This document shows positions 16,750 to 61,544 of a DNA stretch of 64,000 bases, piece after piece. Under the pieces are notes generated by a model. The model was not told the DNA's origin, ran no database searches, and worked only from the letters and a program-made list of their open reading frames with translations. Source of the stretch: Macrostomum lignano (lineage: Eukaryota); NCBI GenBank assembly GCA_002269645.1, contig NIVC01002377.1, forward strand, positions 62,001 to 126,000, in the 5' to 3' direction. The position numbers and the translations under genes were made by a program. Each line of letters opens with the position of its first letter. The stretch's first letter is position 1.

Positions 16750-16754
16750 CGCAG

Positions 16755-36000: not shown

Positions 36001-39000
36001 AGCACATAAGAAAAGCCGAGCTTGGTTAGCAGGTGCCTACACAGGCTGCCAAGACCTTTAGTTGTTTGCACCAGTGCTTTGCGCGTCTCCGTAGTCAAAG
36101 ACCGAGCACGAGTAGCGCCTCTTCCACCAGGCATGCGTTCCACAATGGCTGAAAACTCCAGCAAATATGTGAGGTTCATCGAGTCAGGTGAATTTATAGG
36201 TGATCGTTTCACCTCGTTAAGTCGAATACATGATTTAGGCGACTTGACGTTTACAATCTTCCAGAAGTTTGTAACTAGCTCAACGAAATCAGCAGTGCCT
36301 GTGTAACCTTTCATACGTAGTGCAGCTATAGTCTTCTCATGAAATACATCCAAAACCAGCTTCACCTTTTGGCGCTCTAAAGGAGAAGGATTGCACGAAA
36401 CTGGGCTTAGTGATGTCGGTCTAATAATGTTTTGACGCGAACTCTCTTCAATGTCCACAAGATCGTTCCATTTGGCACATGCTGACGAGCCACCCTCGGT
36501 AAGCACAAACTCAATCTCTTTGTAGCCTTGCGTCAACCATTTATTCCTTACGTTTTTTAACAGGTGCACTGTGTTGTAAAGCAGAAATAGTGGACGGCTG
36601 TCGTCTGCGGGATTTATTGCTCTCCATGGTTCATTCGGATCTTCCCGCGTAAATAAGTCGAAACAGTTTCTGTTCGTAAAATGGTTATCGCAGATTAATG
36701 CGATTACAGTACCGTCACATTCGTGAATAATTCTGATAAGCTTTACAATTTGATGGTGTAGGAACCGTGGCGATAAACTGAAAATAGGAACAAGTCGGGT
36801 CACAAAAGCTTCAGCGCCCATCAAATGCTTCACCATAATGGCTAGAACAGTCCGTGTCAACATATCTGGGGCATCTTCTGCAAATCCAACTGCATGACCG
36901 CCAGTAAATCGCAAGGATGGCTGCACATACACTTCGTCAAAAATCAGACAACAGCAGCGTTGTAAAGGCGAGCTTCGAGTCATTTGCGACGCTACAATTT
37001 GCCGGCACTCTGCGTCTGTTCCTACTGTTCCAAGTCCGCCCAGATGTCGTTTCAACGTGACTGGATGTGGTAGGCACGCGAGGCTCCTTAGTGCACGGTA
37101 TCCACTTCGGCCAGAGAAATACAGTTTTGCAGCTGTCAAAATGTCCTGCGAGTTGTATCGGACTCCTTGTGTTTGCGTAGTGCTAAGCTCTAACTGACGT
37201 AGTAAGAAGGACTGCCGAAAATCACCGGAGCACAATTCCCGCAGGGATTGAACGTGTGCAGCGAGCTCGCTACTCGTAGTCTGTTTAGCTTGCCGAACGT
37301 GGTTAGCCACGGCCTCTAGCTGGCTGAATCGCTCTACACGATGCTGGAAACCTAAAAGGTGCGACACTGCAACTGAAGTATTTAAACGGTAAACACTCAA
37401 CGTGAAGTCTGATTAAACAGATAGAGAAACTTTAACGGTTCTATCTTTAACGATAATAAATTGCACAGCAGATGCACTTCTCTGAACCAGCCAGCCATCC
37501 ACCACTAGTGACAAAACTAAGCTTGTCAGACTGCTCAGCAAAGCTGGACCATGACTGGATTTTATCGACTAAATTGAAGGACTCCATTTCATCCGGTAAA
37601 TGTCCTCGGTGATCAAGAAGAACACCTCGTCGATTGACTTGTCTAGACTGCTCTGAAACATGAATGAAATGCATAACTTGATATCTACTTGGATTTTATC
37701 TGAGCCAAACAGACTATCGTTGGAGCAGCACTTTCCGTTAATTCAAAGAGTAATAACAAATTCACTGCTTATTACACTCACTTGATCCAGTAAGGCGCAT
37801 TGATGACTTTGCAGTTGAAAATACGCTTGGTGGATAGACAGGCCTCGAGTATCGATACAGTTTTATCATGGGTGCATCAGCTGGCCAATGCTTTCTGCAT
37901 ACGCCCATGAACTTTGTGACTTTCTAAAAAGGGAATAGATAAAAAGAAGACCTTGGCTGAAATATACACATTTCTAGTATAGCAAATACTATTGAGAAAT
38001 TCTAGTATAAGCTTAGTAAAAACTCAAAAAACATACATAAATAAACTTACTAATAGAAGCAAGCAGACAATCAAACGAATTCACAAGTTGGTACATGAAA
38101 AGTATATTAGTTAATATTATATTTACCTTTATTTTAGAAGGCAAACATTCCAGCCAGAGTCTAGTAGTAGCTTCATCTTTTGGGAAGCTATATACTGTGA
38201 CCTTATCACCAGTAGAATAGTTGCTGGTGCATCTTGGTACACAGCATTTCATTGGCATGACAGCTGTTAGTCTGCAGTTACATAGAGGTAGAAAGGAAAA
38301 ATTGACTATTTGATATTAATGTAAGCTATACTCCTTCTTTACATTATTATTCATTGTCTTAAAAAGGGTAGAATAATTTAATCCTTTTTCCAATAATACA
38401 TAATGGATTTATTAATAAATTTTGATTTCTGAAATATAGTAAAACTCTTAAGCCTAACCATAATTTATATCATTCTAATTTGATTTACCTTACTTAGTGA
38501 TATTTCTATAATAAGGATTTCAATAAGTCAATGTGTATTAAAAAATAGGCCTAGTCATAGATACCAGTATACAGGGCTTCCATTGGCATCAAGTAAAGCT
38601 AATCAAGTAGACAAACATGTACAAATGAAATATAGTAGGCCTAAATAAGCAAGGTATCAGATAGACTTTAAACAAACCGAAAATCTTTCTAAAAAGAATA
38701 CTTAGTAACAGGCAAAATCAACTAGACATTATAGAATATGCAAAGCATTGGCCTATAAATTAATAACCATTACAACAAAACATGCTAGGTTTCTTTCGTC
38801 CCTATTAATTCAAGGGAAGACCTAGTTGCAATTAGTAGGCCTATATACTTTGCAAAAGAAATCAATGAAAAATCAAGTTACTTATGGCCAAGGGCAAGGG
38901 TTTATGCCTAGTTAGGAATAAAATTGGCATATAGGCCTACTACAATATGCTCGATCCTAATCAATAAGTATATAATGTAAAAACTCTAATAACTAAATAG

Positions 39001-42000: not shown

Positions 42001-44069
42001 GTTCAGACTGTCACCCTCCATCATATCCGCTGTTAGTTCAGACTGTAACCCTGCTCCCTGCTCCACTCACTCGCCTCCAGGTAGAGCTGCTCGTGCAGAA
42101 AAAATACGACGATCCTGAGCACGAAGACGATCTACAGTTCCTATTCGAACGGCTGAGCACTTCAATCCAAGATCTGAGCTCATTCGATGAATACGCCAGC
42201 GAATTGAAGGCTGGCCGACTCGAGTGGAGTCCGGTGCACAAGTCCGAGCGCTTCTGGCGCGAGAATGCCAACAGGCTTAACGAGCGCAACTATGAACTGC
42301 TGAAGATCCTGGTTCGCCTGTTGGAGACTAGCAAAGACTCGCTCGTGCTCTGCGTTGCTGCTCACGATGTTGGAGAGTATGTTCGGCATTATCCCAGGGG
42401 AAAGACGTGAGTTATTGTACGCTTATGCTTTAGACATTTCATGTTCTCATCTCAACATGAGAAATCCCACACTTCTAATCCCAACATGAAAAATCTTAGA
42501 CTTTAATCCCAACATGAGAAATCCCAAAATAAGAAATCCCATACTCTCATCCCAACACGAGAAATCCCAAACTCTAATCCCAACATGAGAAATCCCACAC
42601 TCTAATCCCAACATGCGAAATCCCAAACTCTAATCCGAACATGAGAAATCCTAAACTCTAATCCCAGCATGAGAAATCCCAACATGAGAAATCCCACACT
42701 TCTAATCCCAACATGAGAAATCCCACACTTCTAATCCCAAAATGAGACATCTCAACTCTAATCCCAACATGAAAAATCCCACACTTCTAATCCCAACATG
42801 AGAAATCTCACACTTCTAATCCCAACATGAGAAATCCTAAACTCTAATACAAACACGAGAAATCCCAAACTCCAATCCCAACATGAGAAATCCTACACTC
42901 TAATACAAACACGAGAAATCCCACACTTCTAATCCCAACATGAAAAATCTCACACTTCTAATCCCAGCATGAGAAATCCCACACTTCTAATCCCAAAATG
43001 AGAAATCTCAACTCTAATCCCAACATGAAAAATCCCACACTTCTAATCCCAACATGAGAAATCCCACACTTCTAATCCCAAAATGAGAAATCTCAACTCT
43101 AATCCCAACATGAAAAATCCCAAACTCTAATCCCAACATGAGAAATCCCACACTTCTAATCCCAACATGAGTAATCTCAAACTCTAATCCCAACATGAGA
43201 AACCCCACGCTTCCAATCCCAACATGAGAAATCCTAAACTCTGATCCCAACATGAGAAATCCTAAACTCTAATCCCAGCATGAGAAATCCCAACATGAGA
43301 ATTCCTAAACTCTAATCTCAGCATGAGAAATCCCAACATGAGAAATCCCACACTTCTAATCCCAACATGAGAAATCCCATATTCTAATCCCAACATGAAA
43401 ACTTCTACATTCTCATCCCCACCTCGACATGAGAGATCTCACACATTTATCTCTCGCTAATTAAATGCTGTTTCAAACAACTGCGCAGGGTTATTGAGCA
43501 GCTGGGCGCTAAAGAGCTGGTGATGAGGATGCTGACAAGCGACGATCCCAATGTTCGGTACAACGCTCTCATTGCTGTGCAGAAGATCATGGTGCACAAC
43601 TGGTCTGTTTTGGCTTCATTTTGTCCTTGCTTGGTATAATTATTTTCATTCTTTCAAGGTCGTTTATCTTGTAGGTGGAGCTGTTAGCCTGTTACCCTCT
43701 TCTGACCTGCTGTAGATTAGACTGTCACCCTCTTCTGACCTGCTGTAGATTAAACTGTCTCCCTCTTCTGACCTGCTGTAGATTAGACTGTCACCCTCTT
43801 CTGACCTGCTGTAGATTAAACTGTCTCCCTCTTCTGACCTGCTGTAGATTAGACTGTCACCCTCTTCTGACCTGCTGTAGATTAGACTGTCACCCCACTC
43901 TGACCTGCTGTAGATTATAAATACAGAAACAGACCATCAACACTACATTTCATTTCACTACACGCGCAGGGAGTACCTGGGCAAGCAGATTGAGGACAAG
44001 GCCAAGGCTGAGACTGGCGGTGGCGGCAAATCGGGTGGATCGCAGAGCCAGCAGGCTGTGAAATCTTGA
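30077..44069 (+). CDS. ATP6V1H: V-type proton ATPase subunit H; exons 30077-30173 (less certain), 31817-31898, 32878-33292, 39334-39539, 40476-40641, 42081-42406, 43489-43602, 43970-44069
   Basis: [25 protein letters not shown]|[106 protein letters not shown]|EYLGKQ. All junctions GT-AG and in phase. Confidence 0.96.
32135..32845 (+). repeat. 20-bp minisatellite (GGGAGAGTCAATGAGATGCA), ATP6V1H intron 2
   Basis: Tandem units read directly. Confidence 0.95.
33325..34080 (+). repeat. ~20-bp minisatellite (ATGATCCCAGTGTCTTCCTT), ATP6V1H intron 3
   Basis: Tandem units read directly. Confidence 0.95.
35384..38258 (-). mobile_element. P-element/THAP9-type transposase gene (spliced, probably disrupted), antisense in ATP6V1H intron 3; exons ~38258-38127, 37923-37782, 37652-35996 (broken near 37410-37500), 35880-35384
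   Basis: THAP C2CH split by an intron (MKCCVPRC...W|...VCRKHW). Core motifs [33 protein letters not shown]|[17 protein letters not shown]. TIRs not located. Confidence 0.85.
39610..40322 (+). repeat. 23-bp minisatellite (GCGCCAAATTCAGTATTTTGATG), ATP6V1H intron 4
   Basis: Tandem units; TTTGGCGC present on the minus strand. Confidence 0.95.
40715..42050 (+). repeat. 35-bp minisatellite (CTGTCACCCTCCATCCTGTAAGCTGTCAGTTCAGA), ATP6V1H intron 5
   Basis: Tandem units read directly. Confidence 0.96.
42455..43420 (+). repeat. 28-29-bp minisatellite (AATCCCAACATGAGAAATCCCACACTTCT), ATP6V1H intron 6
   Basis: Tandem units read directly. Confidence 0.94.
43690..43915 (+). repeat. 33-bp minisatellite (CTGTCACCCTCTTCTGACCTGCTGTAGATTAGA), ATP6V1H intron 7
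   Basis: Tandem units read directly. Confidence 0.92.
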
Positions 44070-44344
44070 GTTGGAGAGTCGCAGCCGCAGTTCATTTTAA
44101 TTACAATTGGATAACTTCAATAGCAATGCTGACGTAGTTTCACATTTGTCTAGTATTATAGATATCTGTATCTGTTAGTGTAGGCTTTCTTCTGTGTTGT
44201 TAGTGTTGATGCGCAATTGAAATCATATATTCAGCTGCGGACATTTGTCCCCTTATATTGTATTACATGCTTGCGCTCGCTATACTGTAAGTAGTTGTCT
44301 TAGTCTTTTTCCTGTTTTTTGGCTTCTTTTCAGCTGTTTACGGT

Positions 44345-44351
44345 CCGTCTG

Positions 44352-44417
<66 letters not shown>

Positions 44418-44419
44418 CC

Positions 44420-44474
<55 letters not shown>

Positions 44475-44535
44475 GTGTCTGTCTGTCTGTCTGTTTGTCT
44501 GTCCGTCTGTCTGTCTGTCTGTCTGTCTGTCTTGG

Positions 44536-44596
<61 letters not shown>

Positions 44597-44645
44597 TGGT
44601 GTCTGTCTGTCTGTCTGTCTGTCTTGGTGTCTGTCTGTCTGTCTG
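44345..44645 (+). repeat. (GTCT)n microsatellite in the ATP6V1H 3' region
   Basis: Read directly. Confidence 0.96.
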
Positions 44646-45207
44646 CAGACATGCAACTCTTTAAGTTATCTCCAAATCCCATTTCTGTTTATTTTTGACA
44701 AACTACCAGCAGAAAAAAATAATGATTTTACTTTGCCTCGTTGATATTTTATTTTATTCCACAGCAAATTTTCTTGCTTCGAGTTGGCTTTTTATGCAGA
44801 AATAAATCATATTTTCAATGATATTCCATTTTTTGTTGTCCTTGACTAGCACAGCGTTTTCTCCATTCTCAAATACTTCAATGACTTTTTAAATTGTCGT
44901 GCGAGTCTTGGAGACAGACCACAGTTTTTAATTAACTCACAGAGCCTCAGTTTTCTCATTAGAACTTTTTAAGCTTTGCACTCATTTTAGTTCCTGTTTT
45001 ATGCTTTTGACGTTGTGTGTACATTGATTGATAGCCTACTGTTGTAACTATTGATAATTACATGACTATTCCCTAATTTGTTCCTTTATTAATTAATTGC
45101 ATTCACATAAAAATTGCATAATATTTTACAGTAAATGGGTTCCAATTCTAACTCTAGTTTTATTGTAGAATAAAATATATTTGCCTTATCCATTATCTTA
45201 TCGTAAG

Positions 45208-45592
45208 AAATTGAGTGAGTCACGGGGATTAAGCATCACAGCTTGAGTGAGTCACGGCGATTAAACATCAGAGGTTGAGTGAGTCACGGGGATTAAGCAT
45301 CACAGGTTGAGTGAGTCACGGGGATTAAGCATCACAGGTTGAGTGAGTCAGAGGGTTAAACATCAAAGGTTGAGTGAGTCACGGGGTTAAGCATCAAAGG
45401 TTGAGTGAGTCACGGGGATTAAACATCAAAGGTTGAGTGAGTCACGGGGATTAAGCATCACAGGTTGAGTGAGTCACGGTAATCAAGCATCACAGCTTGA
45501 GTGAGTCACGGGGATTAAGCATCACAGCTTGAGTGAGTCACGGGGATTAAGCATCACAGCTTGAGTGAGTCACGGGGATTAAGCATCAGAGG
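45208..45592 (+). repeat. 32-bp minisatellite (TTGAGTGAGTCACGGGGATTAAGCATCACAGG), ~12 copies, immediately upstream of WNK
   Basis: Tandem units, each containing TGAGTCA. Confidence 0.94.
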
Positions 45593-45701
45593 TTTAGTTC
45601 GTCAAAATGGCTGTCAATCACTTCTCAACCTTGCTGGCAATTTGCAGTCTTCAATTCGTCTCACGGTGGAAACCTCGGCTCCAGCCGACGATGGCAGCAA
45701 G

Positions 45702-48700
45702 ATGCCACCGCCGCCGCCGCAGTCTCTGCCAGAGATTCAAGAGCCCGTCCGACTGAGGCAATCGGCGGAGACGCCCACCGGTTCCACAGCTGCGGAAGTA
45801 CTCAGCGAAGTGCACCTGTGCTACGCCAGATCGATGGAGTCTCTTGGCGGCGGCGGCGGCGGCGCGTTGCCGGTGGGCGGCAAAACCGACAGCAGCGTCA
45901 GCAGTTTGAGCCCGCTAGGCGCGCCTTACAAAGGCGCCGCCCGTCCCGCAGTGACCCGGGCTAGAAAGATGCAACGCGTGCCGATTAGAGAAACTGTGCT
46001 CAGCCAATACGAACCGACTGAGGCCGCCCTAGATAGTGGCCTGCAACAGCGTTTATCCGTAGGGATTTCGGCTGCTAGCGAGTAAGTCTGAGGCTATGAA
46101 TCTGTGTAATGTGTTGCTTGACTTGACTTGACTCTGGGCTTGACCCAGGGCTTGACCCAGGGCTTGACCCAGGGCTTGACCCAGGGCTTGACCCAGGGCT
46201 TGACCCAGGGCTTGACCCAGGGCTTGACCCAGGGCTTGACCCAGGGCTTGACTCAGGGCTTGACCCAGGGCTTGACCCAGGGCTTGACTCATACTGACCC
46301 AGGGCTTGACCCAGGACTTGACCCAGGGCTGGACCCAGGACTTGACCCAGGGCTGGACCCAGGACTTGACCCAGGGCTGGACCCAGGACTTGACCCAGGG
46401 CTGGACCCAGGACTTGACCCAGGGCTGGACCCAGGACTTGACCCAGGGCTGGACCCAGGATTTTTCCCTTGTCTTAATGTTTACCTATTGTTCCCTTTGT
46501 TTTACCCTTAGGTTCACCTTAAACTTGACTATATTTTATCCCAGGCTTTGACCAAGGACTTACGCCAAGAACTAACTCACAGTTTTACTCATCATTATTT
46601 TCAGGCGTCGTCGCGTTCTTAGCGAGACAATCTCAAGCCGGTCCAAGCAGGATAAACAGAAAGAGAAGGAACTGCAGCAACAGGAACAACAACAGCAGCC
46701 TCAGCCATCGGAGCAGCAGCAGGCAGCTGAAGCAGACGAATCTCAGATTAGTCAGCAGAGACCAGATTCTGTTGCTATGCCGCCTCCGCCGCCTGCCGTC
46801 ACGACTTTCGCCGCCGCGGCGGGCAGTCACTCGCCTGTTGTAGTCGAGGCAGTCCTTGAGGAGCCTTCGCCAGCCGTGTCAGCAACAGACGCAGCCGATG
46901 TCCCGGCAACAATGAACGGACACGACGCCTCCGCTGCGCAGATCTCGACGGCTGCTTCCGTTGTAGTTTCGGCCACTTCTACTTCGGCCACTTCTACTTC
47001 GATAATAACAACGAATGCCACAACATCAACGACAGTTGCTTTCGCCGCTGCCGCCGTTGCCGCAGTCGCCACACCGCCCCATGCCGCCTCCGAGAAGGAG
47101 CGCGAAATCAACAACAAGAAGGCGGCGAAATCGCGGGAAGAGAAGGCCAAAGAGCGGGAGCGCAAACGGGAGGAGCAGATGTGGCGCCGGCACCAGATGG
47201 AGCTGCAGTTGAAACAGCGGGGCATTGCCGTCAGCCCCTGCGGTCGGTGGATTAAGCACAATATTAAATGCGGCGAAGGCGCCTACAAGCGAGTCTACAG
47301 GGGCTACGATCGGGAGCAGGGCCGGCCCATTGCCTGGTGCGAGCTCAAGTTTCACGTGGGCAAGGATAAGCCAGCTGAGAGGGAGCAGGTTCGCAAGGAG
47401 GTGAGCAGCAGCTGATGCCTGACCCACTGTAGCTAATGCCTGACCCACTGTAGCTGATGCCTGACCCACTGTAGCTGATGCCTGACCCACTGTAGCTGAT
47501 GCCTGACCCACTGTAGCTAATGCCTGACCCACTGTAGCTGATGCCTGACCCACTGTAGCTGATGCCTGACCCACTGTAGCTGATGCCTGACCCACTGTAG
47601 CTAATGCCTGACCCACTGTAGCTAACGATTGACCCATCCCAGCTATCATCGTGACCCATCTCAGCTATAATCCTGACCCATCTCAGCTATCATCCTGACC
47701 CATCCCAGCTATCATCCTGACCCATCTCAGCTATCATCCTGACCCATCTCAGCTATCATCCTGACCCATCCCAGCTATCATCCTGACCCATCTCAGCTAT
47801 CATCCTGACACCCATCCCAGCTATCATCCTGACCCATCTCAGCTATCATCCTGACCCATCTCAGCTATCATCCTGACCCATCTCAGCTATCATCCTGACC
47901 CATCTCAGCTATCATCCTGACACCCATCCCAGCTATCATCCTGACCCATCTCAGCTATCATCCTGACCCATCTCAGCTATCATCCTGACCCATCTCAGCT
48001 ATCAACCTGACCCATCTCAGCTTTCATCCTGAACCATCTCAGCTATCATCCTCAACCAGCGCTTGCCGAAGCACTTGACTGGCCAAATTCATCCCATTTC
48101 AATCCCCCAACGCAGGTGGAAATGATGATCAAGTGCGAGCACCCCAACATAGTCCGCTACTATGACCTACTGGACTGCTATTTCGAATTAGACGAAAACG
48201 GCGAGAAAGGCGAGAAAGTGAAAGCTACGGTCATTGTCACCGAGTTCATGAGCGAGGGCACTCTGCGTGAGAAGATGAAGACGTTCTATAATGAGAGGAC
48301 TCGCGAGGCTGTTGTCGATTTTAATGTTTTCCAGTCCTGGATGCAGCAGATTTTAGAGGGGCTGCGGCATATGCATCACAAGTGAGTATGCATTCTGAAT
48401 TAGTGAGATTTCGGGATGAGATCTCTCTGTTAAGAGTGAGATGTCGGGACGAGATCTCTCTATTAAGGGTGAGATTTCGGGATGAGATCTCTCTGTTAAG
48501 GGTGAGATTTCGGGATGAGATCTCTCTGTTAAGGGTGAGATTTCGGGATGAGATCTGTCTGTTAAGGGTTAGATTTCGGGATGAGATCTCTCTGTTAAGA
48601 GTGAGATTTCGGGATGAGATTAAGGGTTAGATTTCGGGATAAGATCTTTCTGTTAATGTTGAGATTTCAGGATGAGATCTCTCTGTTAAGGGTTTAGATT

Positions 48701-51700
48701 TCGGGATGAGATCTCTCTGTTAAGGGTTAGATTTCGGGATGAGATCTCTCTGTTAATGTTGAGATTTCAGGATGAGATCTCTCTGTTAATGTTGAGATTT
48801 CGGGATGAGATCTCTCTGTTAAGGGTGAGATTTCGGGATGAGATCTCTCTGTAAAGGGTTAGATTTCGGTTTAAGATCTTTCTGTTAATGTTGAGATTTC
48901 AGGATGAGATCTCTCTGTTAATGTTGAGATTTCAGGATGAGATCTCTCTGTTAATGTTGAGATTTCGGGATGAGATCTCTTTGTTAATGGTGAGATTTCA
49001 GGATGAGATCTCTCTGTTAAGGGTGAGATTTCGGGATGAGATCTCTCTATTAAGAGTGGTATTTCAGGATGATATCTCTCTGTTAAGGGTGGTATTTCAG
49101 GATGAGATCTCTCTGTTAAGGGTGGTATTTCAGGATGAGATCTCTCTGTTAAGGGTGAGACTTCAGGATGAGATCTCTATTAAGAGTGAGATTTCGGGAT
49201 GAGATCTCTCTGTGAGATTTCGAGTTACCAGCTCTCTTAATATCTCAATCATGAATGTGATAACTACCTATGCTATCCCCATATCGCAGGATGAACCCTC
49301 CAGTGATCCACCGCGACCTCAAGCCGGAGAACGTGTTCATAGCCGATGGCGAGAATCCTGACGAATATTACAATATCAAGCTGGGCGACTTCGGCCTGGC
49401 CACGGCCAAGACTCAGACCCGCAAGACCATGCTGGGCACTCTGGGCTACATGGCTCCGGAGATGCTGCAGGAGCGTTACGATGAGAAAGTTGACATATTC
49501 GCCTTTGGCATCCTCATTGTGGAGATGGTTACTAATAGTATTCCTTATCAGGAGTGCCAGAATTTTCTAGACGTCTGGCAGAGGATTGCCAGCAATACGC
49601 CGCCTAAGGTGCTCACTCGGTGAGTCGGTGCTAGATTAGAGCAGGGGAGAGAGGGAGACAGAGAATGGAGGATTGGAGGAGAGCATTGGAGGATAACTGG
49701 AGAAGTCGGCAATTCGCATCGAGATTTCCCACTAAATTTGCAGCATCGACAATCCGGAAATCCGGGACATATTTTTCACTTGTACAAATCCGTTGCCGGA
49801 TTTCCGGCCGACAGCCGAGGAGCTGCTGTCGCTGCAGATTTTCAATTTGAAACCGGTGCCAATTCAAGTGCAGCTGGTCCGACTGTCGCAGGCGCTTAAA
49901 TGGGAGGAGGCCGACAGCTCCGAGGCGAATCTGTCGGGGGTGCGTGACCGTGAAATGTACTTTTCAGTGTTTCGGCTATTTGTTTGCGTTAGTTGTCTCT
50001 TGTACATGTATCATCAGAAGAGTAGCTACCAGCCAATCAAAAATGAGTAGCTACCAGCCAATCAGAAATGAGTAGCTACCAGCCAATCAGAAATGAGTAG
50101 CTACCAGCCAATCAGAAATGAGTAGCTACCAGCCAATCAGAAATGAGTAGCTACCAGCCAATCAGAAATGAGTAGCTACCAGCCAATCAGAACAGAGTAG
50201 CTACCAGCCAATCAGAACAGAGTAGCTCAGCTACCAGCCATTTAGGCAGAGTAGCTTAGCTACCATCCAATCAGGGATGAGTAGCTACCAGCTAATCAGG
50301 GATTGAGTAACTACCAGCTAATCATGGATGAGTAGCTACCAGCTAAGCAAGGATGAGTAACTACCAGCTAAGCAGGGATGAGTAACTACCAGCTAATCAG
50401 GGATTGAGTAACTACCAGCTAAGCAAGGATGAGTAACTACCAGCCAATCAGGGATGAGTAGCTCAGCTACCAGCCAATCAGGGCAGAGTAGCTCAGCTAC
50501 CAGCCAATCAGGGCAGAGTAGCTCAGCTACCAGCCAATCAGGACAGAGTAGCTCAGCTACCAGCCAATCAGAACAGAGTAGCTCAGCTACCAGCCAATCA
50601 GGACAGAGTAGCTCAGCTACCAGCCAATCAGAACAGAGTAGCTCAGCTACCAGCCAATCAGGACAGAGTAGCTCAGCTACCAGCCAATCAAAGAAGAGCA
50701 GTCAGTGTTTTCATCCTTACCAATCCTCAGGAGCAGCCCAAGAAGGTGTCCCATCAGCAGCACGGCAGCCGTGACGAGTCCACAGCCGCCGCGGTCGCCG
50801 CCGCGGTCGCCGCCGCCCCGACCGTCGAGTACAACGGCGATCCAAGCAAATTCTTTCACGTCGCTGAGTTCCGCTTGGTAGTTAATGATCGTCAACTCCA
50901 ACAGCAGATGAAAATTCTACCAGGCGTCGGATTTGAATTCCAGCTGGACTGCTTCATCGACGAGGATCTGGAGAATGTTGTCAACTCGTTCGCCGAGTAC
51001 GCTGAGTCCGATGCCGTCGGCGCCGCGGCCGGCGGCAGCGCCAGCGACCATCAGCGCCGACTGCGTCAGAAGATTTCAGGCGTGCGGCATCAGCTCAACT
51101 ACTATAGGAAAAAGGTTTGCCGGTTTTAGTCAGATCATAACTAGCCAATCAGTGAGCTTCTACATCATAACTAGCCAATCAGAGATCTAGATCATAACTA
51201 GCCAATCAGAGATCTAGATCATAACTAGCCAATCAGAGATCTAGATCATAACTAGCCAATCAGAGATCTAGATCATAACTAGCCAATCAGAGATCTAGAT
51301 CATAACTAGCCAATCAGAGATCTAGATCATAACTAGCCAATCAGAGATCTAGATCATAACTAGCCAATCAGAGATCTAGATCATAACTAGCCAATCAGAG
51401 ATCTAGATCATAACTAGCCAATCAGAGATCTAGATCATAACTAGCCAATCAGAGATCTAGATCATAACTAGCCAATCAGAGATCTAGATCATAACTAGCC
51501 TATCAGAGATCTAGATCATAACTAGCCAATCAGAGATCTAGATCATAACTAGCCAATCAGTTGAGCTTCTAGATCATAACTAGCCAATCAGTGAGCTTCT
51601 AAATCATAACTAGCCAATCAGTGATCTAGATCATAACTAGCCAATCAGAGATCTAGATCATAACTAGCCAATCAGAGATCTAGATCATAACTAGCCAATC

Positions 51701-54700
51701 AGAGATCTAGATTATAACTAGCCAATCAGAGATCTAGATCATAACTAGCCAATCAGACATCTAGATCATAACTAGCCAATCAGTGATCTAGATCATAACT
51801 AGCCAATCAGAGATCTAGATCATAACTAGCCAATCAGACATCTAGATCATAACTAGCCAATCAGTGATCTAGATCATAACTAGCCAATCAGACATCTAGA
51901 TCATAACTAGCCAATCAGAGATCTAGATCATAACTAGCCAATCAGAGATCTAGATCATAACTAGCCAATCAGAGATCTAGATCATAACTAGCCAATCAGA
52001 GATCTAGATCATAACTAGCCAATCAGAGATCTAGATCATAACTAGCCAATCAGTGATCTAGATCATAACTAGCCAATCAGAGATCTAGATCATAACTAGC
52101 CAATCAGAGATCTAGATCATAACTAGCCAATCAGTGATCTAGATCATAACTAGCCAATCAGAGATCTAGATCATAACTAGCCAATCAGAGATCTAGATCA
52201 TAACTAGCCAATCAGTGAGCTTCTAAGTCGTCGTTGCCAGTCAGCGAGCTTCTAGATAACTGTTAGCCTATCAGAGATCTGCCAATCATGCCTGTCGCAT
52301 TTTTATTCCCGAAAGGTTCTAGCCGGCGTATGGAACTACTTTATGGAGAAGCTGCGCGAATCCGACCCGGAGCCGGACTCGGAGAACGACTCGTCCCCCA
52401 TAGTGAGGCTGGGCCTCCAGGCCAGACGCTGGGCCGAAGCGAAACGACGCGTATTAAAACAGCGTGACGACTATAACAGGTGCTGGGAGGAGAAGCTGGA
52501 GGCCCAGCAGCAGGCTCAAGATGAATCTTGCAACGTTGACGAGCCTGCGGCGACCGTTACACCTCTGGCGTCGGCTTCCGTGTCGCTATCGACTTCAGTG
52601 ACGCAGGCGTTAATCGTCTCTGCAGCCGACCAGCAGCAGCAGCCGCCGCCACCCGTCCAGCTTCCTCCTTCATCATCTTCCTCATCATCGCTATCCGAGC
52701 CGCATCCGCCAGGATCGGTCCGCCAGAATCTCGAGGCCGTTCAGAGCGTCCTGTCGAGCGCCGCTGCCGCACTCGACATTGAGCACGCCGTCACCGCCGC
52801 GTCGACTGCTGCTGCTGCCCAGTCTAGCCTGGTTGTCGGTTTGTCTCCGGCTGGCGTTGCCAGTCTGCCAGCCGTTGCCATAGCAACCATGCCGCCGTCG
52901 CTTCCCAATTCGATGGTGTCGCCGGAATTTAGCCAGCTGCCGGCTCTGGCCGCCTCCCCGGCCGCCGCTCTGACCATCGTTGTTGACGCGGCCACAGCAG
53001 CCGCGCTTAACGGCAGCGGCGGCACCAGCGGGGCCGGCGGCGGCAGCGGCGGCAGAGGCAACCTTAGCATCATTCAGGAGGTGGATAACGCGGTGAGTCA
53101 TCTTGGTGATTAACGCATGTTAATGGCCATGGACCGATTTCGATTGATCATGAGCCCATTCCTATTGGTCATGCACCGATTTCGATTGGTCATGAGCCCA
53201 TTCCTATTGGTCATGCACCGATTTCGATTGGTCATGAGCCCATTTCTATTGTTCATGCACCGATTTCGATTGGTCATGGAGCGATTTCAATTGGTCATGC
53301 ACCGATTTTGATTGGTGGTGGACCGATTTCAATTGGTCATGGACCGATTTCTATTGGTCATGAATTAATTTCGATTGGTCATGAAGTAAGTTCGATTGGT
53401 CATGGAGCGATTTAGATTGGTCATGGACCGATTTAGATTGGTCATGAATTAATTTCAATTGGTCATGAATTAAGTTCGATTGGTCATGGAGCGATTTCTA
53501 TTGGTCATGGACCGATTTCAATTGGTCATGGACCGATTTCTATTGGTCATGAATTAATTTCGATTGGTCATGAATTAAGTTCGATTGGTCATGGAGCGAT
53601 TTAGATTGGTCATGGACCGATTTAGATTGGTCATGAATTAATTTCGATTGGTCATGGAGCGATTTCAATTGGTCATAGATCGATTTCGATTGGTCATGGA
53701 TCGATTTCGATTGGTCATGGAGCGATTTCGATTGGTCATGGACCGATTTCGATTGGTCATGGAGCGATTTCGATTGGTCATGGACCGATTTCGATTGGTC
53801 ATGGACCGATTTCGATTGGTCATGGACTGGTCCATAGATGATTAATTTCGATCGATCATCATTAATCATAAAATATTGTTACACATACAGTGAATGGTGC
53901 CAACTCCAACCCCATCTACCGCTCCCCTCACCCCGCAGCCCAAGTCGCCAATGCAGGCCATCGTGGCCGCGCCGCCGCCGACTCCGCACAACAGCCTCGG
54001 TCGGCGGGACAAGCGGCCCAACGTTGAGGACGCCTCGGCCGAGATAGACGCCGCCGCCGACGCCGCCGCCGACGCTGAGGTGCTAGCGTCGTCGACAACC
54101 GCTGAGCTGCTTTTGCCTGCCGGCCGAAACGGCGAACGGCCTCTCCGCCTGCCGCTGCCCGACCTCGCCGCCGGCCGCTGCGTTCTCCTCTGCCCGTGCG
54201 GCGGCGATGGGCGCCGCGTCCTCGTGGCCAGCTGCCGCTCCGGGCCCGACGCCACGCTTGGCGAGGTGCTGGCGCTGTTGCAAACCGCTGCCGCGGCTGC
54301 CGCGTCTACCGGCACCGACGCCGCTGGGAACGGCGTTGCGGCTACGGCTACGGCTACTGGGCAGGCGATTCGAGCCCGGCACTACCTGGGCAGGTGTCAC
54401 ACGCCGCCCTCCAGTCCCACTAGTGAGTGAGAGAGAGATAGAGATTCATGCTTCAAATACAGGCCGCCTGATGTGCTTTTTAAGTCCTTGTCTACGTGCT
54501 TAGCTAACCGCGGTCAACTTCGCTTAACTTGTATGAAATAAAATCAGCAGTTTCTGAAGTAATCAAAATACAATAGTAATGTTGAGAGATGGTTTTGAAA
54601 GTAGTTTGAATAAGTTCAGGTGTTCCTTAGATTGTGTTAGCAGTAGTTTAGAATTTTAGGTGTACTTTAGATTACTTTAGAAGAAATTTAGATTATTTTA

Positions 54701-55310
54701 GGAGCAGTTTAAACTATCTTAAAAGTAGTTTAGATTTACTTAGGAGTAGTTTAATTTAATTTAGGAGTTTTAACTTAGTCTAGATCATTTCAGAATCTAA
54801 GTTAAGAATATTTTTAGAGTTTAGAATAATTTAGGAGTAGCTGAAAATATTTTAAAACTAGTTTAGACTATTTTAGGAACACTTTTAGATAATTTTAGGA
54901 GTAGTTTAGATAATTTTAGGAGTAGTTTAGATAATTTTAGGAGTAGTTTAGATAATTTTAGGAGTAGTTTAGATAATTTTAGGAGTAGTTTAGATAATTT
55001 TAGGAGTAGTTTAGATAATTTTAGGAGTAGTTTAGATAATTTTAGGAGTAGTTTAGATAATTTTAGGAGTAGTTTATACGCTCTTCTAATAGTAGTCTAG
55101 GCTAACATAGTCTAATGAGAAATGGGTTGAATAATGCAAGTACTTCTGTCCCGGTCTGCCGCAGGGTTCGATTTCGTCCAGCCACCCACGATAGCAGAAG
55201 CAGCAGAAGCAGCTTCAGGCGGCAAAAAAACGGTTGGCAGGGTTGCCGTGTCATCAACTCTGCTAAGCGACACACCGGCCACGCCAGACAGTTCAACAAA
55301 TGGACAGTGA
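45702..55310 (+). CDS. WNK: WNK-family Ser/Thr kinase; exons 45702(acceptor ends 45647)-46081, 46605-47400, 48116-48381, 49290-49619, 49744-49939, 50731-51114, 52316-53092, 53939-54422, 55165-55310
   Basis: GEGAYKRVY (Lys in subdomain I) and AWCEL (Cys replacing the subdomain-II Lys) are diagnostic of WNK. Also HPNIVRYYD, HRDLKPEN, GDFGLAT, YMAPE and a post-kinase PF2-like segment (FEFQLDCFIDEDLENVV). Junction phases are consistent; terminal exons are less certain. Confidence 0.9.
46130..46460 (+). repeat. 12-bp (TTGACCCAGGGC) and derived 24-bp repeat, WNK intron 1
   Basis: Read directly. Confidence 0.95.
47410..48055 (+). repeat. Two adjacent related arrays, 21-bp (TGATGCCTGACCCACTGTAGC) then 22-bp (CCTGACCCATCTCAGCTATCAT), WNK intron 2
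   Basis: Read directly; shared CCTGACCCA core. Confidence 0.94.
48400..49215 (+). repeat. 33-bp minisatellite (GTGAGATTTCGGGATGAGATCTCTCTGTTAAGG), WNK intron 3
   Basis: Read directly. Confidence 0.95.
50025..50695 (+). repeat. 25/30-bp minisatellite with AGCCAATCAG core, WNK intron 5
   Basis: Read directly. Confidence 0.94.
51130..52220 (+). repeat. 27-bp minisatellite (GATCATAACTAGCCAATCAGAGATCTA), ~40 copies, WNK intron 6
   Basis: Read directly. Confidence 0.96.
53120..53830 (+). repeat. 21-bp minisatellite (CCGATTTCGATTGGTCATGGA), WNK intron 7
   Basis: Read directly; CCAAT on the minus strand. Confidence 0.94.
54885..55075 (+). repeat. 21-bp repeat (GTAGTTTAGATAATTTTAGGA), WNK intron 8
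   Basis: Read directly. Confidence 0.92.
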
Positions 55311-55814
55311 AACTAAATATAATCTTATATTTGATTTGCATTGGGTTCGGTTCGTGATGTCATTCATCATTTATCTAATTTCATCATCAAAATGTTTTTG
55401 TCTTCTCTGAAATACTCGAATTCAATCGGTGAATCTTTCTTTACCCTTAGAATACTTGGTTTCTTTCCTGCATGGATACTACTACTGTTTACTAGTAGTA
55501 TTAGTGGTAGAAGTGGCTAGCGTGCACAATAATCCCCCCGCGTGTAAGGGGTCAGTGTAATGATTGTTAACTGCTGCTGCTGGTATCTCCTTTGCCTTCC
55601 TATATTGTATTTATCTTTTGTTCCCCAGTGAGTAGCGAGTAGCAAGTAGTGAGTAGCGAGTGTAACTTCAAGTTGTAATCTTATTTATTTGTTTATTCAT
55701 ATTTCAATGCAGAGTTGGTTTGACCTGTTTAAAATATTGATTTATAGAGTAATTTTTTACTAACCTCTAATTTAAAACTTATGTTGTCATTTGATGAAGA
55801 TTTTTAATGTCATT

Positions 55815-57885: not shown

Positions 57886-59454
57886 GCACGCTTTTGTACA
57901 AGTTCGCTAATTCCCCCCAAGCGCCCCCCGAGCCATTTGGCAATCGTTGATCCCAACTAAGCAGAGCCAACTGCAGCTTAACGGAACCTCTCAGTCAAGC
58001 CTCAATCGCCTTTGTCCAAGCGAAGCCAGTAAGACAACACAGCATTTTGTGTCTGCGCTTTCGAGAAAATGTCACGAAACCGGACCGGCTGTCATTGTGT
58101 GTGCGCTCGCGCGCCATTGTGCGTCACGCAAGACTACGGCGGAGGTTTAAAAAGAGAAAATCCGGATCTCATCCTAAGCAGCGGGTGGAAAGCGTCATGT
58201 GTCAGTTGTGCTGACCATTTATGCCGAGTAGGAATGAATGAATGAATGAATGAGGGTTGTCATTAAGAGCAAGGATTTTTGTCTAACAAGAGTCAGCCAG
58301 CTCAGGGACCACTGCGGACATGGGAGTGACTACGAGTAGCCTGGGCCAGTTCTCTTTCAAATAATTGCATATTGCTAGTCGGCTTTTTACCATAGATATT
58401 TCCCGCTGCTGGGCGCGGGCAGAGCATATTTAACCATAGACAAAGTTTCAACTATTAGAGAAGAGAAGAGGAGGGAAGAGAGAGAGAGACATTATAGGAA
58501 CTCTGTTAGTAGCCAAGGATCTTGACAATTGTTGAAATCTAACTTGCATTGTATTTTATTAATTAGTTGATAGCTGTTTTCAACGATTCTCTCGAATCAA
58601 ACGGCCGGCCCACCCGCCGTGGGCAAGCGAGAGCAGTTTTTCAAAAGAAGAAAAATGCAATTTCAAGCCGCAAATTCAATTCAGTAATGAAAGAACGACG
58701 CGAAATGAATGCCAGAGGAAGACGGGACAGAAAAACAAATTAATTCTCTGCCAAAAAATGATTCAAGCTACCCCAGGTCCCGCCCGCCATGGACACAGAC
58801 AGAGACTCTCACCAGAGAGAGAGAGTCTCGTAGCTTTCTAATTTCTGCGGAAGCACTTCAAAAGGAAAAAGACAAAGGGCTGGCGGTGCGTTGCTGCTGG
58901 TGGAAGAGTCGGCCGTCGGCAGACTAGAAAGAAACTTTTAGGGAGCTGAGCCAGACCCGTTCCGCTCACTCTCTCCCCTTCCGTGAGCCCCGCCCTTGAC
59001 TGCAGCTGCCGCCAAGGGGGGGGGGGCGGCAGTGAAGGCCCAGCTGAAGTGAAGAGGAAAAACACAATTGAAAGCGAATTCACAAATACCGCATTTATAC
59101 CTCCCTAGCCTTGGCTCTCACTGACACCGCGCAGGCGTGACACTTCATTTGTGAATAGGAGGCCAGCCAGACCGGCTCACTGACTGCATACTCCTGTTTT
59201 TCTGTTGGAGCGGCGCACTGTTTGGCATGCGGTTTTTGTTCTCTTTTGTCTCTCAGTCAGTCCCCCGCACCGCCACGCCCCGTGCTCAGCCGCGTCTCAA
59301 CTAGTTTTGTCTCTTTCTCATTCCTCTCCCCTCTCACTGAGTTGCTGTTCCAACGAAATTTTCTGCAGACAGAACTCACTTAATTTTTCAGCTCACCGCT
59401 GATAGCTTGTAGTTTTAGCTGTGAGTTTCTTAATGCTGGATTATACACTGTGCG

Positions 59455-60145
59455 ACTGGGACTGACTGAGAGCTCTGCTTGTGACTGAGAGCTCGGATTG
59501 TGACTGAGAGCTCTGGGTTGTGACTGACTGAGAGCTCTGATTGTGACTGACTGAGAGCTCTGGGTTGTGACTGACTGACTGAGAGCTCTGATTGTGACTG
59601 ACTGAGAGCTCTGATTGTGACTGACTGACTGAGAGCTCTGATTGTGACTGACTGAGAGCTCTGATTGTGACTGACTGACTGAGAGCTCTGATTGTGACTG
59701 ACTGACTGAGAGCTCTGATTGTGACTGACTGACTGAGAGCTCTGATTGTGACTGACTGACTGAGAGCTCTGATTGTGACTGACTGAGAGCTCTGATTGTG
59801 ACTGGCTGAGAGCTCTGATTGTGACTGACTGACTGAGAGCTCTGATTGTGACTGACTGAGAGCTCTGGGTTGTGACTGACCGAGAGCTCTGATTGTGACT
59901 GACTGAGAGCTCTGATTGTGACTGACTGAGAGCTCTGATTGTGACTGACTGACTGAGAGCTCTGATTGTGACTGACTGAGAGCTCTGATTGTGACTGACT
60001 GACTGAGAGCTCTGATTGTGACTGACTGAGAGCTCTGATTGTGACTGACTGACTGAGAGCTCTGATTGTGACTGACTGAGAGCTCTGATTGTGACTGACT
60101 GACTGAGAGCTCGGATTGTGACTGACTGAGAGCTCTGGTTTGTGA
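59455..60145 (+). repeat. 23/27-bp minisatellite (GAGAGCTCTGATTGT(GACT)2-3)
   Basis: Read directly. Confidence 0.94.
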
Positions 60146-60589
60146 CTGATTTGGACTCGCATTACTTTAAAGTTCAACTAGCTGGACTGCTAAGTGACTC
60201 AGACTGCAGACACAGATTTCATATAAAGTTTACAAAGGCTTCAATTATACGGATATGGATTAAGACGAAGAGCCATGCAGGAACCGGAAGTCAAGGTCTG
60301 GGCCTTGGATCAAACTGATTACACGAGCATTGCAATAAGATGGCGTCTCCCATTACAGCTTTGCAAACACAGAGTGATCGTGTCTTTTCTCGGCTCATTC
60401 GTCTCGCTTAAAAAGCGGCCCGGACACTCCAGACTGCTGTTGGATGAGGCGGTCTGTTTGCTCACTAACTTTCTTTTTCGAAAAGCATATATAATGTATG
60501 GGCAATTTCTATACATATATAGGCCTGGGGTACAGACTAGTTCGTCTGCTGTACCATTGAAGACTTACTGTTGTCAGAACTACACACCA

Positions 60590-61150
60590 CTCTGCTCTTG
60601 GCGCCACTGCCTCCCTCTGCTCTTGGCGCCGCTGCTTCCCTCTGCTCTTGGCGCCGCTGCTTCCCATTTCTCTTGGCGCCACTGCCTCCCTCTACTCTTG
60701 GCGCCACTGCCTCCCTCTACTCTTGGCGCCACTGCCTCCCTCTACTCTTGGCGCCACTGCCTCCCTCTACTCTTGGCGCCACTGCCTCCCTCTACTCTTG
60801 GCGCCACTGCCTCCCTCTACTCTTGGCGCCACTGCCTCCCTCTACTCTTGGCGCCACTGCCTCCCTCTACTCTTGGCGCCACTACCTCCCTCTTTTCTTG
60901 GCGCCACTGCATCCCTCTTCTCTTGGCGCCACTGCCTCCCTCTACTCTTGGCGCCACTACCTCCCTCTTTTCTTGGCGCTACTGCCTCCCTCTTCTCTTG
61001 GCGCCACTGCCTCCCTCTACTCTTGGCGCCACTGCCTCCCATTTCTCTTGGCGCCACTGCCTCCCATTTCTCTTGGCGCCACTGCTTCCCATTTCTCTTG
61101 GCGCCACTGCCTCCCTCTTCTCTTGGCGCCACTGCCTCTCTCTTGGCGCC
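60590..61150 (+). repeat. 25-bp minisatellite (CTCTTGGCGCCACTGCCTCCCTCTA)
   Basis: Read directly. Confidence 0.95.
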
Positions 61151-61544
61151 CCTGCCTTCCTCAATCTATACTCGTAATTTAACTTAATTGCACCGCTACT
61201 CCTTAATGACTGTTAATTTCAGCTGTAATAATGAGAGCGACAGTCAGACAGATAAGGCACAGATAAACGAGAGATTAAAATGACAGGCTTTGCACAGCAA
61301 AGGGTCAGCGGCGGACACGCTCTCTTAGCCCTACTATACAGTTGTAAGAACTCAGCTGTTTCACTTTTGACCCGAGGATTTTTTGTCGGAACTTTCGCTG
61401 AGCTGTCAAGGATCAGCAGCTGCGCAAACTTGCTGTCAATCCTGGCTGTCTTTCCTATCTGGAAATATTGACTAAAATTTCAATGAGAGCATTGTGCTTC
61501 TATGCTGATCAATCGCTTACGAGAGGGGGGGATAAGAGGGATGA

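What the first reader, a model, noticed from the sequence alone, without database searches (positions are those of the whole stretch)
49290..49460. WNK kinase with natural DFG instead of DLG: predicted chloride-insensitive
Seen: WNK-diagnostic GEGAYK and AWCEL occur with KLGDFGLAT, HRDLKPEN and activation loop TQTRKTMLGTLGYMAPE. Established: canonical WNKs have DLG, whose Leu lines the inhibitory chloride site; the engineered Leu-to-Phe change (WNK1 L369F) reduces chloride inhibition. Inference: a naturally chloride-uncoupled WNK with Thr at the autophosphorylation position, possibly relevant to osmoregulation in seawater or brackish habitats.
Basis: partly seen in the sequence, partly recalled or inferred. 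Interest (0 to 1): 0.7.

Follow-up and report, generated by a model that had tools for sequence, protein, structure and literature searches.

The report
Flatworm WNK kinase with natural DFG
This is a real WNK-family kinase gene of the flatworm Macrostomum lignano. Like every flatworm WNK I could find, it carries Phe instead of the chloride-pocket Leu (DFG, not DLG) and Gly instead of a second regulatory Glu, so it is probably poorly inhibited by chloride, but nobody has tested this.

Summary
Window 49290-49619 (+) is exon 3 of a nine-exon gene. Its spliced product is a WNK kinase: the catalytic Lys sits in the glycine loop (GEGAYK) and Cys replaces the usual beta3 Lys (AWCEL). Its best solved relatives are human WNK3 and WNK1 (E about 1e-60; the next family scores 1e-26).

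The Phe of KLGDFGLAT is not a sequencing error. Three Macrostomum lignano paralogues and the WNKs of flukes, tapeworms and a monogenean all have DFG. All 139 DLG-type WNKs compared have Leu there, including marine animals, an annelid and a rotifer.

The flatworm clade also replaces:
- two more chloride-pocket residues (F283 to Y/C, L299 to I);
- E388 with Gly; engineered E388A is more active and less chloride- and potassium-sensitive;
- Y420;
- S382 with Thr.

In the Schistosoma haematobium kinome table, this DFG gene is the only WNK-family locus.

Reduced direct chloride inhibition is therefore a reasonable inference (about 0.55), but it is untested. I found no paper describing it.

The parts
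45702..46081 (+). Likely first coding exon. Candidate start ATG at 45702; the open frame runs from 45561. Donor GT at 46082.
   Evidence: The frame is continuous with the next exon and resembles the N-terminal region of paralogue P0165. The start codon is not verified.
46605..47400 (+). Exon with a low-complexity N-terminal region, a Lys/Glu-rich stretch, and kinase strands beta1-beta3. GEGAYK at 47272-47289 carries the catalytic Lys (WNK1 K233). AWCEL at 47332-47346 has Cys at the usual beta3 Lys position (WNK1 C250).
   Evidence: AG/GT splice sites; alignment to WNK3.
48116..48381 (+). Exon with helix C through the hinge. HPNIVRYYD (48140-48166) has Tyr at WNK1 F283. ATVIVTEF (48224-48247) has Ile at WNK1 L299 and Thr at the gatekeeper position T301.
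49290..49619 (+). Exon 3, the finding: catalytic loop HRDLKPEN, KLGDFGLAT, the activation loop and helix F.
49390..49392 (+). TTC codon for the Phe of DFG (WNK1 L369 position).
   Evidence: All 139 DLG-type WNKs compared have Leu here and all 10 flatworm sequences have Phe.
49426..49428 (+). Thr codon at the WNK1 Ser382 (activating autophosphorylation) position.
49444..49446 (+). Gly codon at the WNK1 Glu388 position (activation-loop member of the AL-CL cluster; potassium and water-network site).
   Evidence: Function of E388 from PMC11588334 and PMC13397483.
49744..49939 (+). Exon with the end of the kinase C-lobe.
50731..51114 (+). Exon with a post-kinase domain conserved across flatworm WNKs (FHVAEFRLVV...GVGFEFQLD...). 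It is possibly the divergent counterpart of the WNK CCT-like autoinhibitory domain.
   Evidence: Homologous to the stretch just after the kinase domain in tapeworm and fluke WNKs. hhalign against the canonical WNK post-kinase domain gives 83.7% probability over 34 columns. Pfam OSR1_C gives no hit and Foldseek gives no hit.
52316..53092 (+). Exon with a conserved helix (VLAGVWNYFMEKL...RLGLQARRWAEAKRR), then an Ala/Ser/Pro/Gln-rich low-complexity region.
53939..54393 (+). Exon in the C-terminal region, similar to the C-terminus of paralogue P0165.
55165..55357 (+). Last coding exon as assembled (stop at 55355-55357). Reading one base later gives a tail like the paralogue's, ending at 55310.

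Best explanation
The window holds one of at least three Macrostomum lignano copies of the flatworm WNK kinase gene.

Shown: the protein has every catalytic residue of an active WNK. These are the displaced catalytic Lys in the glycine loop, the helix-C Glu, HRD, the metal-binding Asp and APE.

Shown: the flatworm lineage has replaced residues that in mammalian and fly WNKs make the kinase a direct ion and water sensor.
- Three of the four side chains of the chloride pocket differ: L369F, F283Y/C and L299I. L371 is kept.
- Activation-loop Glu388 is Gly.
- Tyr420 is Ile, Val, Ser or Thr.

Inferred mechanism: the Phe restores the ordinary kinase DFG and fills the hydrophobic pocket that holds chloride under the 3/10 helix. 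Loss of Glu388 removes a pillar of the water-filled cage that stabilises the inactive dimer. Autophosphorylation of the activation-loop Thr should then be only weakly inhibited, or not inhibited, by chloride, and probably by potassium.

Regulation would then come from elsewhere: the conserved post-kinase domain, the long disordered C-terminus, partner proteins or phosphatases.

My confidence by part:
- WNK family member with a genuine, lineage-wide DFG: about 0.95.
- Markedly reduced direct chloride inhibition: about 0.55.

The overall figure given is for the whole statement, mechanism included.
For: - Family: the best solved relatives are WNK3 and WNK1 at 205-209 bits, against 94 bits for the next family, STK24. 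The Lys-in-glycine-loop and AW[C] signatures are present. WNK-type sequences, flatworm clade included, form a clade in 100% of NJ bootstraps.
- Species and copies: UniProt M. lignano fragments P0005 and P0006 reproduce the window exons. Paralogues P0001 and P0017/P0165 also read GDFGLAT.
- Lineage-wide: the Paragonimus, Dicrocoelium, Schistosoma japonicum, Echinococcus, Schistocephalus, Cichlidogyrus and Clonorchis proteins all have [IV]GDFGLAT and ...TMLGT.GFMAPE.
- Contrast: 139 of 139 DLG-type WNKs have L369, E388, Y420 and S382. In all 10 flatworm sequences these are F, G, I/V/S/T and T.
- Enrichment: 111 columns are at least 97% conserved in canonical WNKs, and 25 are replaced in every flatworm. 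That includes 5 of the 9 conserved chloride-pocket or AL-CL residues (Fisher p = 0.026).
- Only WNK locus in schistosomes: the S. haematobium kinome table lists one WNK-family entry plus one 338-aa unclassified fragment with the same N-terminus. It carries VGDFGLATH, and no GDLGLAT or VAWCEL string occurs in the table (PMC4669435 supplement).
- Function of the residues: L369F lowers chloride inhibition (PMC7606576). [quoted passage not shown] The E388/E314 mutants and WNK3 L295F are less potassium-sensitive (PMC13397483).
Against: - No assay exists for any flatworm WNK.
- Chloride is held by the backbone amides of G370 and L371, and both residues are kept.
- L369F alone reduces chloride inhibition of WNK1 but does not abolish it; the fully insensitive constructs carry L369F/L371F.
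- The smaller Ile at 299 and Tyr or Cys at 283 could re-make room for an ion beside the Phe.
[quoted passage not shown] The flatworm changes at D353 and Y420 could therefore pull the other way.
- I could not exclude a second, canonical DLG WNK in Macrostomum. One search listed only the top 120 of 3940 hits.
- In the NJ tree the flatworm clade is a long branch that does not join the other animal WNKs (10% support), so strict orthology is not proven.
Confidence: 0.55

Rival explanations
1. It is the flatworm WNK and still senses chloride normally. The ion is bound by main-chain amides, and co-variation at 283 and 299 accommodates the Phe, so DFG is a neutral or compensated change.
For: G370 and L371 are invariant in flatworms. 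The chloride ligands are backbone amides. L299I and F283Y/C always accompany L369F in flatworms, which looks like coupled change. Single L369F only reduces sensitivity.
Against: Phe at this position is the one substitution chosen experimentally to block the site in WNK1, WNK3 and WNK4. E388, whose loss also lowers chloride sensitivity, is gone as well.
Confidence: 0.3
2. It is an old, divergent WNK-like paralogue with a different job (not the SPAK/OSR1-SLC12 pathway). The loss of sensor residues would then reflect a change of function rather than a retuned sensor.
For: The flatworm clade does not group with other animal WNKs in the NJ tree (10% bootstrap). Pfam OSR1_C, present in nearly all canonical WNKs listed, is not detected. 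This copy has no RFx[VI] motif. Unnamed protist WNK-like proteins also have DFG.
Against: It is the only WNK-family locus in the schistosome kinome table, where it is paired with fly Wnk and worm wnk-1 as orthologues. An OSR1/SPAK/fray/gck-3 orthologue is listed in the same table. The post-kinase domain matches the canonical one weakly but at the right place. A 'VG(N)RFTV' motif sits near the C-terminus of paralogue P0165 and of the Echinococcus WNK. Long-branch attraction explains the tree position more simply than loss of the canonical gene plus retention of an ancient paralogue in one phylum only.
Confidence: 0.13
3. It is an artefact: a sequencing or assembly error at the Phe codon, or a decaying pseudogene copy.
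For: TTC is one base from CTC (Leu). The last exon is one base out of frame relative to the paralogue. The M. lignano assembly is highly duplicated (PMC5730564).
Against: The same Phe occurs in three M. lignano copies and nine other species. All eight introns have GT-AG ends and all kinase exons are open. Kinase exons are 88-96% identical to the paralogues, against about 70% in non-kinase exons, as expected under constraint.
Confidence: 0.02

Closest known systems
Mammalian WNK1 and WNK3 kinase domains (e.g. PDB 6CN9, 5O2C)
   Same: Kinase fold; catalytic Lys in the glycine loop and Cys at the beta3 Lys position; HRD, APE and L371 conserved. 42-45% identity, E about 1e-60.
   Different: DFG instead of DLG; Tyr for F283; Ile for L299; Gly for E388; Ile for Y420; Pro for C352; Thr for S382; activation loop one residue shorter.
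Engineered chloride-insensitive WNK mutants (WNK1 L369F and L369F/L371F, WNK3 L295F, WNK4 L322F/L324F) and the activating WNK1 E388A / WNK3 E314A
   Same: The window protein naturally carries the L369F-type change and lacks the E388 side chain. These are the two classes of substitution reported to lower chloride (and potassium) inhibition.
   Different: L371 is not changed. The substitutions sit in a background with 25 other lineage-fixed differences, so the net effect cannot be read off the mutants.
Parasitic flatworm 'WNK1'/'WNK4' proteins (Echinococcus CDS20373.1, S. japonicum KAH8853002.1, S. haematobium Sh_Smp_154440.1)
   Same: Same clade (99.5% bootstrap). Same GEG.YK, AWCE., GDFGLAT and TMLGT.G[FY]MAPE motifs, and the same post-kinase domain.
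   Different: The parasites have Cys at 283, Gln at the gatekeeper 301 and much longer C-termini (2000-2600 aa). They are 46-48% identical to the window protein.
Unnamed protist WNK-like kinases with DFG (P0007, P0008, P0180, P0183-P0185) and Creolimax WNK with DMG (P0066)
   Same: WNK-type lysine placement without the DLG Leu, showing that the Leu is not universal in the family.
   Different: Separate clades. Most keep E388 and F283 and have Phe at 299. Organisms are unknown except Creolimax.

Membership tests
WNK (with-no-lysine) protein kinase family | Catalytic Lys in the glycine-rich loop (strand beta2), and no Lys at the canonical beta3 VAIK position | tested here: met
   GEGAYK aligns with WNK1 K233 and AWCEL has Cys at C250. 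K233 is invariant in all WNK-type sequences compared.
WNK (with-no-lysine) protein kinase family | Closer in sequence to WNKs than to any other kinase family, and inside the WNK clade | tested here: met
   WNK3/WNK1 score 205-209 bits, the next family 94 bits. WNK-type monophyly is 100% in NJ bootstraps. Grouping with other animal WNKs is not recovered (10%).
WNK (with-no-lysine) protein kinase family | Intact catalytic machinery (helix-C Glu, HRD Asp, catalytic-loop Lys, metal-binding Asp, APE) | tested here: met
   The equivalents of E268, D349, K351, D368 and APE are all present.
WNK (with-no-lysine) protein kinase family | Activation-loop autophosphorylation site (WNK1 Ser382) | tested here: met
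   A phosphorylatable Thr sits at the aligned position in all flatworm sequences; it is Ser in 139 of 139 DLG-type WNKs. Phosphorylation itself was not tested.
WNK (with-no-lysine) protein kinase family | CCT-like / PF2-like (Pfam OSR1_C) autoinhibitory domain directly after the kinase domain | tested here: inconclusive
   No Pfam OSR1_C hit even at E = 10. hhalign against the canonical domain gives 83.7% probability over 34 columns at the right position. The AlphaFold model has pLDDT 70 and Foldseek finds no PDB match.
WNK (with-no-lysine) protein kinase family | RFx[V/I] motifs that dock SPAK/OSR1 | tested here: not met
   There is none in this copy in either reading of the last exon (RFDF at best). 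Paralogue P0165 (GRFTVLP) and Echinococcus (GNRFTVVS) have one near the C-terminus. A single motif is weak evidence either way, at about 0.5 expected by chance per 2000 aa.
Chloride-sensing WNKs (functional class defined on WNK1, WNK3, WNK4 and Drosophila WNK) | DLG motif with Leu369, plus the F283, L299 and L371 hydrophobic chloride pocket | tested here: not met
   The window protein has F369, Y283 and I299; only L371 is kept.
Chloride-sensing WNKs (functional class defined on WNK1, WNK3, WNK4 and Drosophila WNK) | AL-CL cluster around conserved water network 1 (E388, K381, K375, D353, K310, Y420) | tested here: not met
   E388 is Gly, Y420 is Ile, D353 is Glu and K310 is Arg. K381 and K375 are kept. 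Cluster definition from PMC11588334.
Chloride-sensing WNKs (functional class defined on WNK1, WNK3, WNK4 and Drosophila WNK) | Inhibition of autophosphorylation by chloride in vitro | not testable with these tools
   Needs recombinant protein.

The most novel reading that the evidence does not exclude
Flatworms as a phylum have dismantled the whole direct ion and water sensor of WNK: the chloride pocket, Glu388 (the potassium site) and the water-network cage. Their single WNK lineage would then run cell-volume and SLC12 control without direct chloride feedback. It would instead sense something else, such as crowding through the long disordered C-terminus, or be set by partners. That would be a natural, phylum-wide counterpart of the engineered 'chloride-blind' WNKs.
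Probability: 0.3. Interest if true: 0.65.

Novelty: new variant of a known kind. Interest (0 to 1): 0.5.

Why it matters
Leu369 and Glu388 are treated as conserved across all WNKs and as the basis of chloride, potassium and osmotic sensing.

- A whole animal phylum in which both are replaced, while the kinase stays otherwise intact, is a ready-made natural test of that model.
- M. lignano can be cultured, knocked down and made transgenic (PMC5730564), so the in vivo test is feasible.
- The same variant active site, plus a Gln gatekeeper, is present in the only WNK-family gene listed for schistosomes, and in the tapeworm WNKs. That is relevant to anyone considering WNK as an anthelmintic target.

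Tried and rejected
- Pfam scan for OSR1_C in the post-kinase region of the window protein and of three flatworm homologues: no hit.
- AlphaFold model of that region (pLDDT 70) and Foldseek against the PDB: nothing below E = 2.7. The CCT-like assignment therefore rests only on hhalign.
- Search for a canonical DLG WNK in flatworms, using the Helobdella WNK as query: 3940 hits but only the top 120 listed, none from flatworms. This is uninformative.
- NJ phylogeny: it settles family membership but not the position among animal WNKs, because of the long branch.
- Literature searches (WNK with DLG/DFG, Platyhelminthes, planarian, Schistosoma kinome, Smp_154440, chloride-insensitive with evolution): no paper describes the flatworm DFG.
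- Habitat adaptation idea: rejected, because parasites share DFG and marine invertebrates have DLG.
- Sequencing error and pseudogene: rejected.
- Not run: a kinase-domain structure prediction. The tools return no coordinates, so it could not show whether the Phe occupies the chloride site.
Full report
**What is in the window**

The region is eukaryotic. Short open exons with AG/GT borders are separated by introns made almost entirely of tandem repeats.

Joining the open stretches at canonical splice sites gives a + strand gene with these coding exons:
- 45702(?)-46081
- 46605-47400
- 48116-48381
- 49290-49619
- 49744-49939
- 50731-51114
- 52316-53092
- 53939-54393
- 55165-55357

It holds HRDLKPEN (49309-49332), KLGDFGLAT (49378-49404; Phe codon TTC at 49390-49392) and TQTRKTMLGTLGYMAPE (49411-49461).

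GEGAYK (47272-47289) and AWCEL (47332-47346) are real, but they lie two exons upstream.

**Whose gene it is**

The word-indexed protein search returned Macrostomum lignano entries.
- Two badly modelled UniProt fragments, P0005 and P0006, reproduce long runs of the window's exons letter for letter. The window is therefore M. lignano.
- P0001 (81% identical) and P0017/P0165 (88-93% in the kinase exons) are further copies. This fits the known large-scale duplication in this genome (PMC5730564).

**Is it a WNK?**

- Against all PDB sequences, the top 15 hits are WNK3 and WNK1 (199-209 bits, E down to 1e-60). The next family, STK24/MST3, scores 94 bits.
- The family's defining trait is present. The catalytic Lys is in the glycine loop and Cys occupies the beta3 Lys position. 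The helix-C Glu, HRD, the catalytic-loop Lys, the metal-binding Asp and APE are all kept.
- In an NJ tree of 39 kinase domains, all WNK-type sequences separate from the outgroup kinases in 100% of 200 bootstraps. The flatworm sequences form one clade in 99.5%.
- That clade is a long branch and joins the other animal WNKs in only 10% of replicates. Family membership is firm; exact orthology is not proven by the tree.

**How general is the DFG?**

An exhaustive HMMER search of 1.84 billion cluster representatives gave 950 proteins below 1e-30. I parsed the best 150, plus the word-search hits, for the relevant motifs.
- The nearest relatives all read G-E-G-G-Y-K, AWCEF, [IV]GDFGLAT and ...TMLGT.GFMAPE. 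They come from Paragonimus, Dicrocoelium, Schistosoma japonicum (annotated WNK4), Echinococcus granulosus and E. multilocularis (annotated WNK1), Schistocephalus, Cichlidogyrus and Clonorchis (names).
- All 139 other WNKs in the alignment read GDLGLAT. They include Anopheles, a tardigrade, a rotifer, the annelid Helobdella, the nematode Pristionchus, Limulus, a barnacle, a crinoid and many vertebrates.
- Outside flatworms, DFG appears in two small groups of unnamed protist WNK-like proteins. Creolimax has DMG.
- The published S. haematobium kinome table lists one WNK-family kinase, Sh_Smp_154440.1, plus a 338-aa fragment with the same N-terminus. Its sequence contains VGDFGLATH and VAWCEF. Neither GDLGLAT nor VAWCEL occurs anywhere in that table. 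The same table lists an OSR1/fray/gck-3 orthologue (PMC4669435 supplement).

In schistosomes, then, the DFG kinase is the only WNK-family gene listed. For Macrostomum I could not exclude an extra DLG copy, because one search listed too few hits to tell.

**The sensor residues**

The numbering is rat/human WNK1. I checked it against residue labels in three papers and mapped it through a WNK1-type sequence in a 163-sequence alignment.

| WNK1 residue | Role | DLG-type WNKs (n = 139) | Flatworm clade (10 sequences) |
|---|---|---|---|
| F283 | chloride pocket | 137 | Tyr (Macrostomum), Cys (parasites) |
| L299 | chloride pocket | 135 | Ile |
| L369 | chloride pocket | 139 | Phe |
| L371 | chloride pocket | 139 | Leu (kept) |
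| E388 | AL-CL cluster | 139 | Gly |
| Y420 | AL-CL cluster | 139 | Ile, Val, Ser or Thr |
| D353 | AL-CL cluster | 137 | Glu in Macrostomum and Cichlidogyrus; Asp kept in the other parasites |
| C352 | catalytic loop | 139 | Pro, Ala or Ser |
| S382 | activating phosphosite | 139 | Thr |

- Of 111 columns at least 97% conserved in canonical WNKs, 65 are kept in flatworms and 25 are replaced in every flatworm sequence.
- The replaced set includes 5 of the 9 conserved chloride-pocket or AL-CL positions (Fisher one-sided p = 0.026).
- Several replacements (F369, I299, P/A352) match what the outgroup kinases have. The lineage looks 'de-specialised' toward an ordinary kinase at these sites.

**What the residues do, from the literature**

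- Chloride binds the backbone amides of G370 and L371, with hydrophobic contacts to F283, L299, L369 and L371. L369F raises autophosphorylation. L369F/L371F and its WNK4 equivalent give chloride-insensitive kinases, also in mice (PMC7606576).
- E388, K381 and K375 form, with the catalytic loop, a cage around a conserved water network in the inactive dimer. [quoted passage not shown] - E388/E314 mutants and WNK3 L295F are also less potassium-sensitive (PMC13397483).

**Mechanism I consider most likely**

Shown: this is an intact, constrained WNK kinase in which Phe replaces the pocket Leu and Gly replaces Glu388, fixed from Macrostomorpha to Neodermata.

Inferred: the canonical chloride site and the water cage that hold mammalian WNKs in the inactive dimer are weakened or absent. 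The kinase would then autophosphorylate its activation-loop Thr with little direct inhibition by chloride, and probably by potassium. Control would shift to other parts of the protein or to partners.

Candidates for that control are:
- a post-kinase domain conserved across flatworms, which aligns weakly with the canonical autoinhibitory CCT-like domain (hhalign 83.7%, 34 columns) but is not recognised by Pfam or by fold search;
- the long Ala/Ser/Pro/Gln-rich C-terminus.

Caveats:
- The ion ligands are main-chain atoms that remain.
- Single L369F is only a partial loss.
- The accompanying changes at 283 and 299 might compensate.
- The changes at 353 and 420 resemble human mutants that went the opposite way.

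**What is not supported**

M. lignano is indeed an intertidal animal. But the same residues are fixed in parasites of blood, bile ducts, lung, gut and fish gills, while marine arthropods and an echinoderm keep DLG.

**Novelty**

The proteins are in public databases, and the parasite ones are already named WNK1 or WNK4. I found no paper in the searchable library that mentions the DFG, the missing Glu388, or their implication.

I rate it a new variant of a known kind. It is of moderate interest as a natural experiment on the WNK chloride-sensing model in a tractable animal.

Noticed in passing
window 46127-46459, 47410-48052, 48403-49213, 50013-50698, 51132-52215, 53124-53827, 54637-55076: Seven of the gene's eight introns each consist mostly of their own private tandem array (unit 12, 21/22, 33, 25, 27, 21 and 21/42 bp; up to 40 copies). 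Only the 124-bp intron at 49620-49743 has none. M. lignano is known to have 15% simple and tandem repeats (PMC5730564), but one array per intron is striking.
   Followed up: partly
window 54393 / 55165: As assembled, the last exon joins in a frame that gives a basic, odd tail (...RVRFRPATHDSRSS...). Reading one G later gives a tail like paralogue P0165 (GRFDFVQPPTIAEAAEAAS...). At the place where P0165 has the SPAK/OSR1-type motif GRFTV and Echinococcus has GNRFTV, this copy reads RFDF. This could be a real frameshift in this copy, an assembly indel in a G run, or another acceptor site.
   Followed up: partly
window 42081-49617 (UniProt models P0005, P0006, P0002): The public M. lignano protein models for this locus and a paralogue are mis-spliced. 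They read through intron repeats, skip the DFG exon, and appear to fuse an upstream gene (matches at 42081-43552).
   Followed up: partly
related proteins P0003, P0004, P0018-P0022 (parasitic flatworm WNKs): The parasite WNKs have Gln at the gatekeeper position (WNK1 T301) and Cys at F283. Macrostomum keeps Thr at 301, and 138 of 139 canonical WNKs have Thr. This may matter for inhibitor selectivity.
   Followed up: no
related proteins P0007, P0008, P0180, P0183-P0185, P0066: WNK-type kinases from unnamed microbial eukaryotes also carry DFG, in two separate clades. The ichthyosporean Creolimax has DMG. The pocket Leu is therefore not universal outside animals, fungi and plants.
   Followed up: partly
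window 864-2593 (+): Exons of an XPD/ERCC2-type helicase (Pfam HBB 1.5e-26; Helicase_C_2 6e-40).
   Followed up: partly
window 6800-8562 (+): Exons of a class I/II aminotransferase (Pfam Aminotran_1_2). By eye it looks like a serine palmitoyltransferase-like gene, with GT-rich microsatellite introns.
   Followed up: partly
window 21668-22783 (-) and 35985-37400 (-): Two intact transposase-like ORFs: a 371-aa DDE_3/HTH (Tc1/mariner-type) ORF and a 471-aa TNP-like RNase H (THAP9/P-element-type) ORF.
   Followed up: partly
window 32816-33346 (+): Exon encoding the N-terminal part of V-ATPase subunit H (Pfam 1.6e-32).
   Followed up: partly
window 10401-12517, 16150-16770, 18269-20087, 59380-63986: Kilobase-scale micro- and minisatellite arrays that give long spurious ORFs in several frames.
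   Followed up: no
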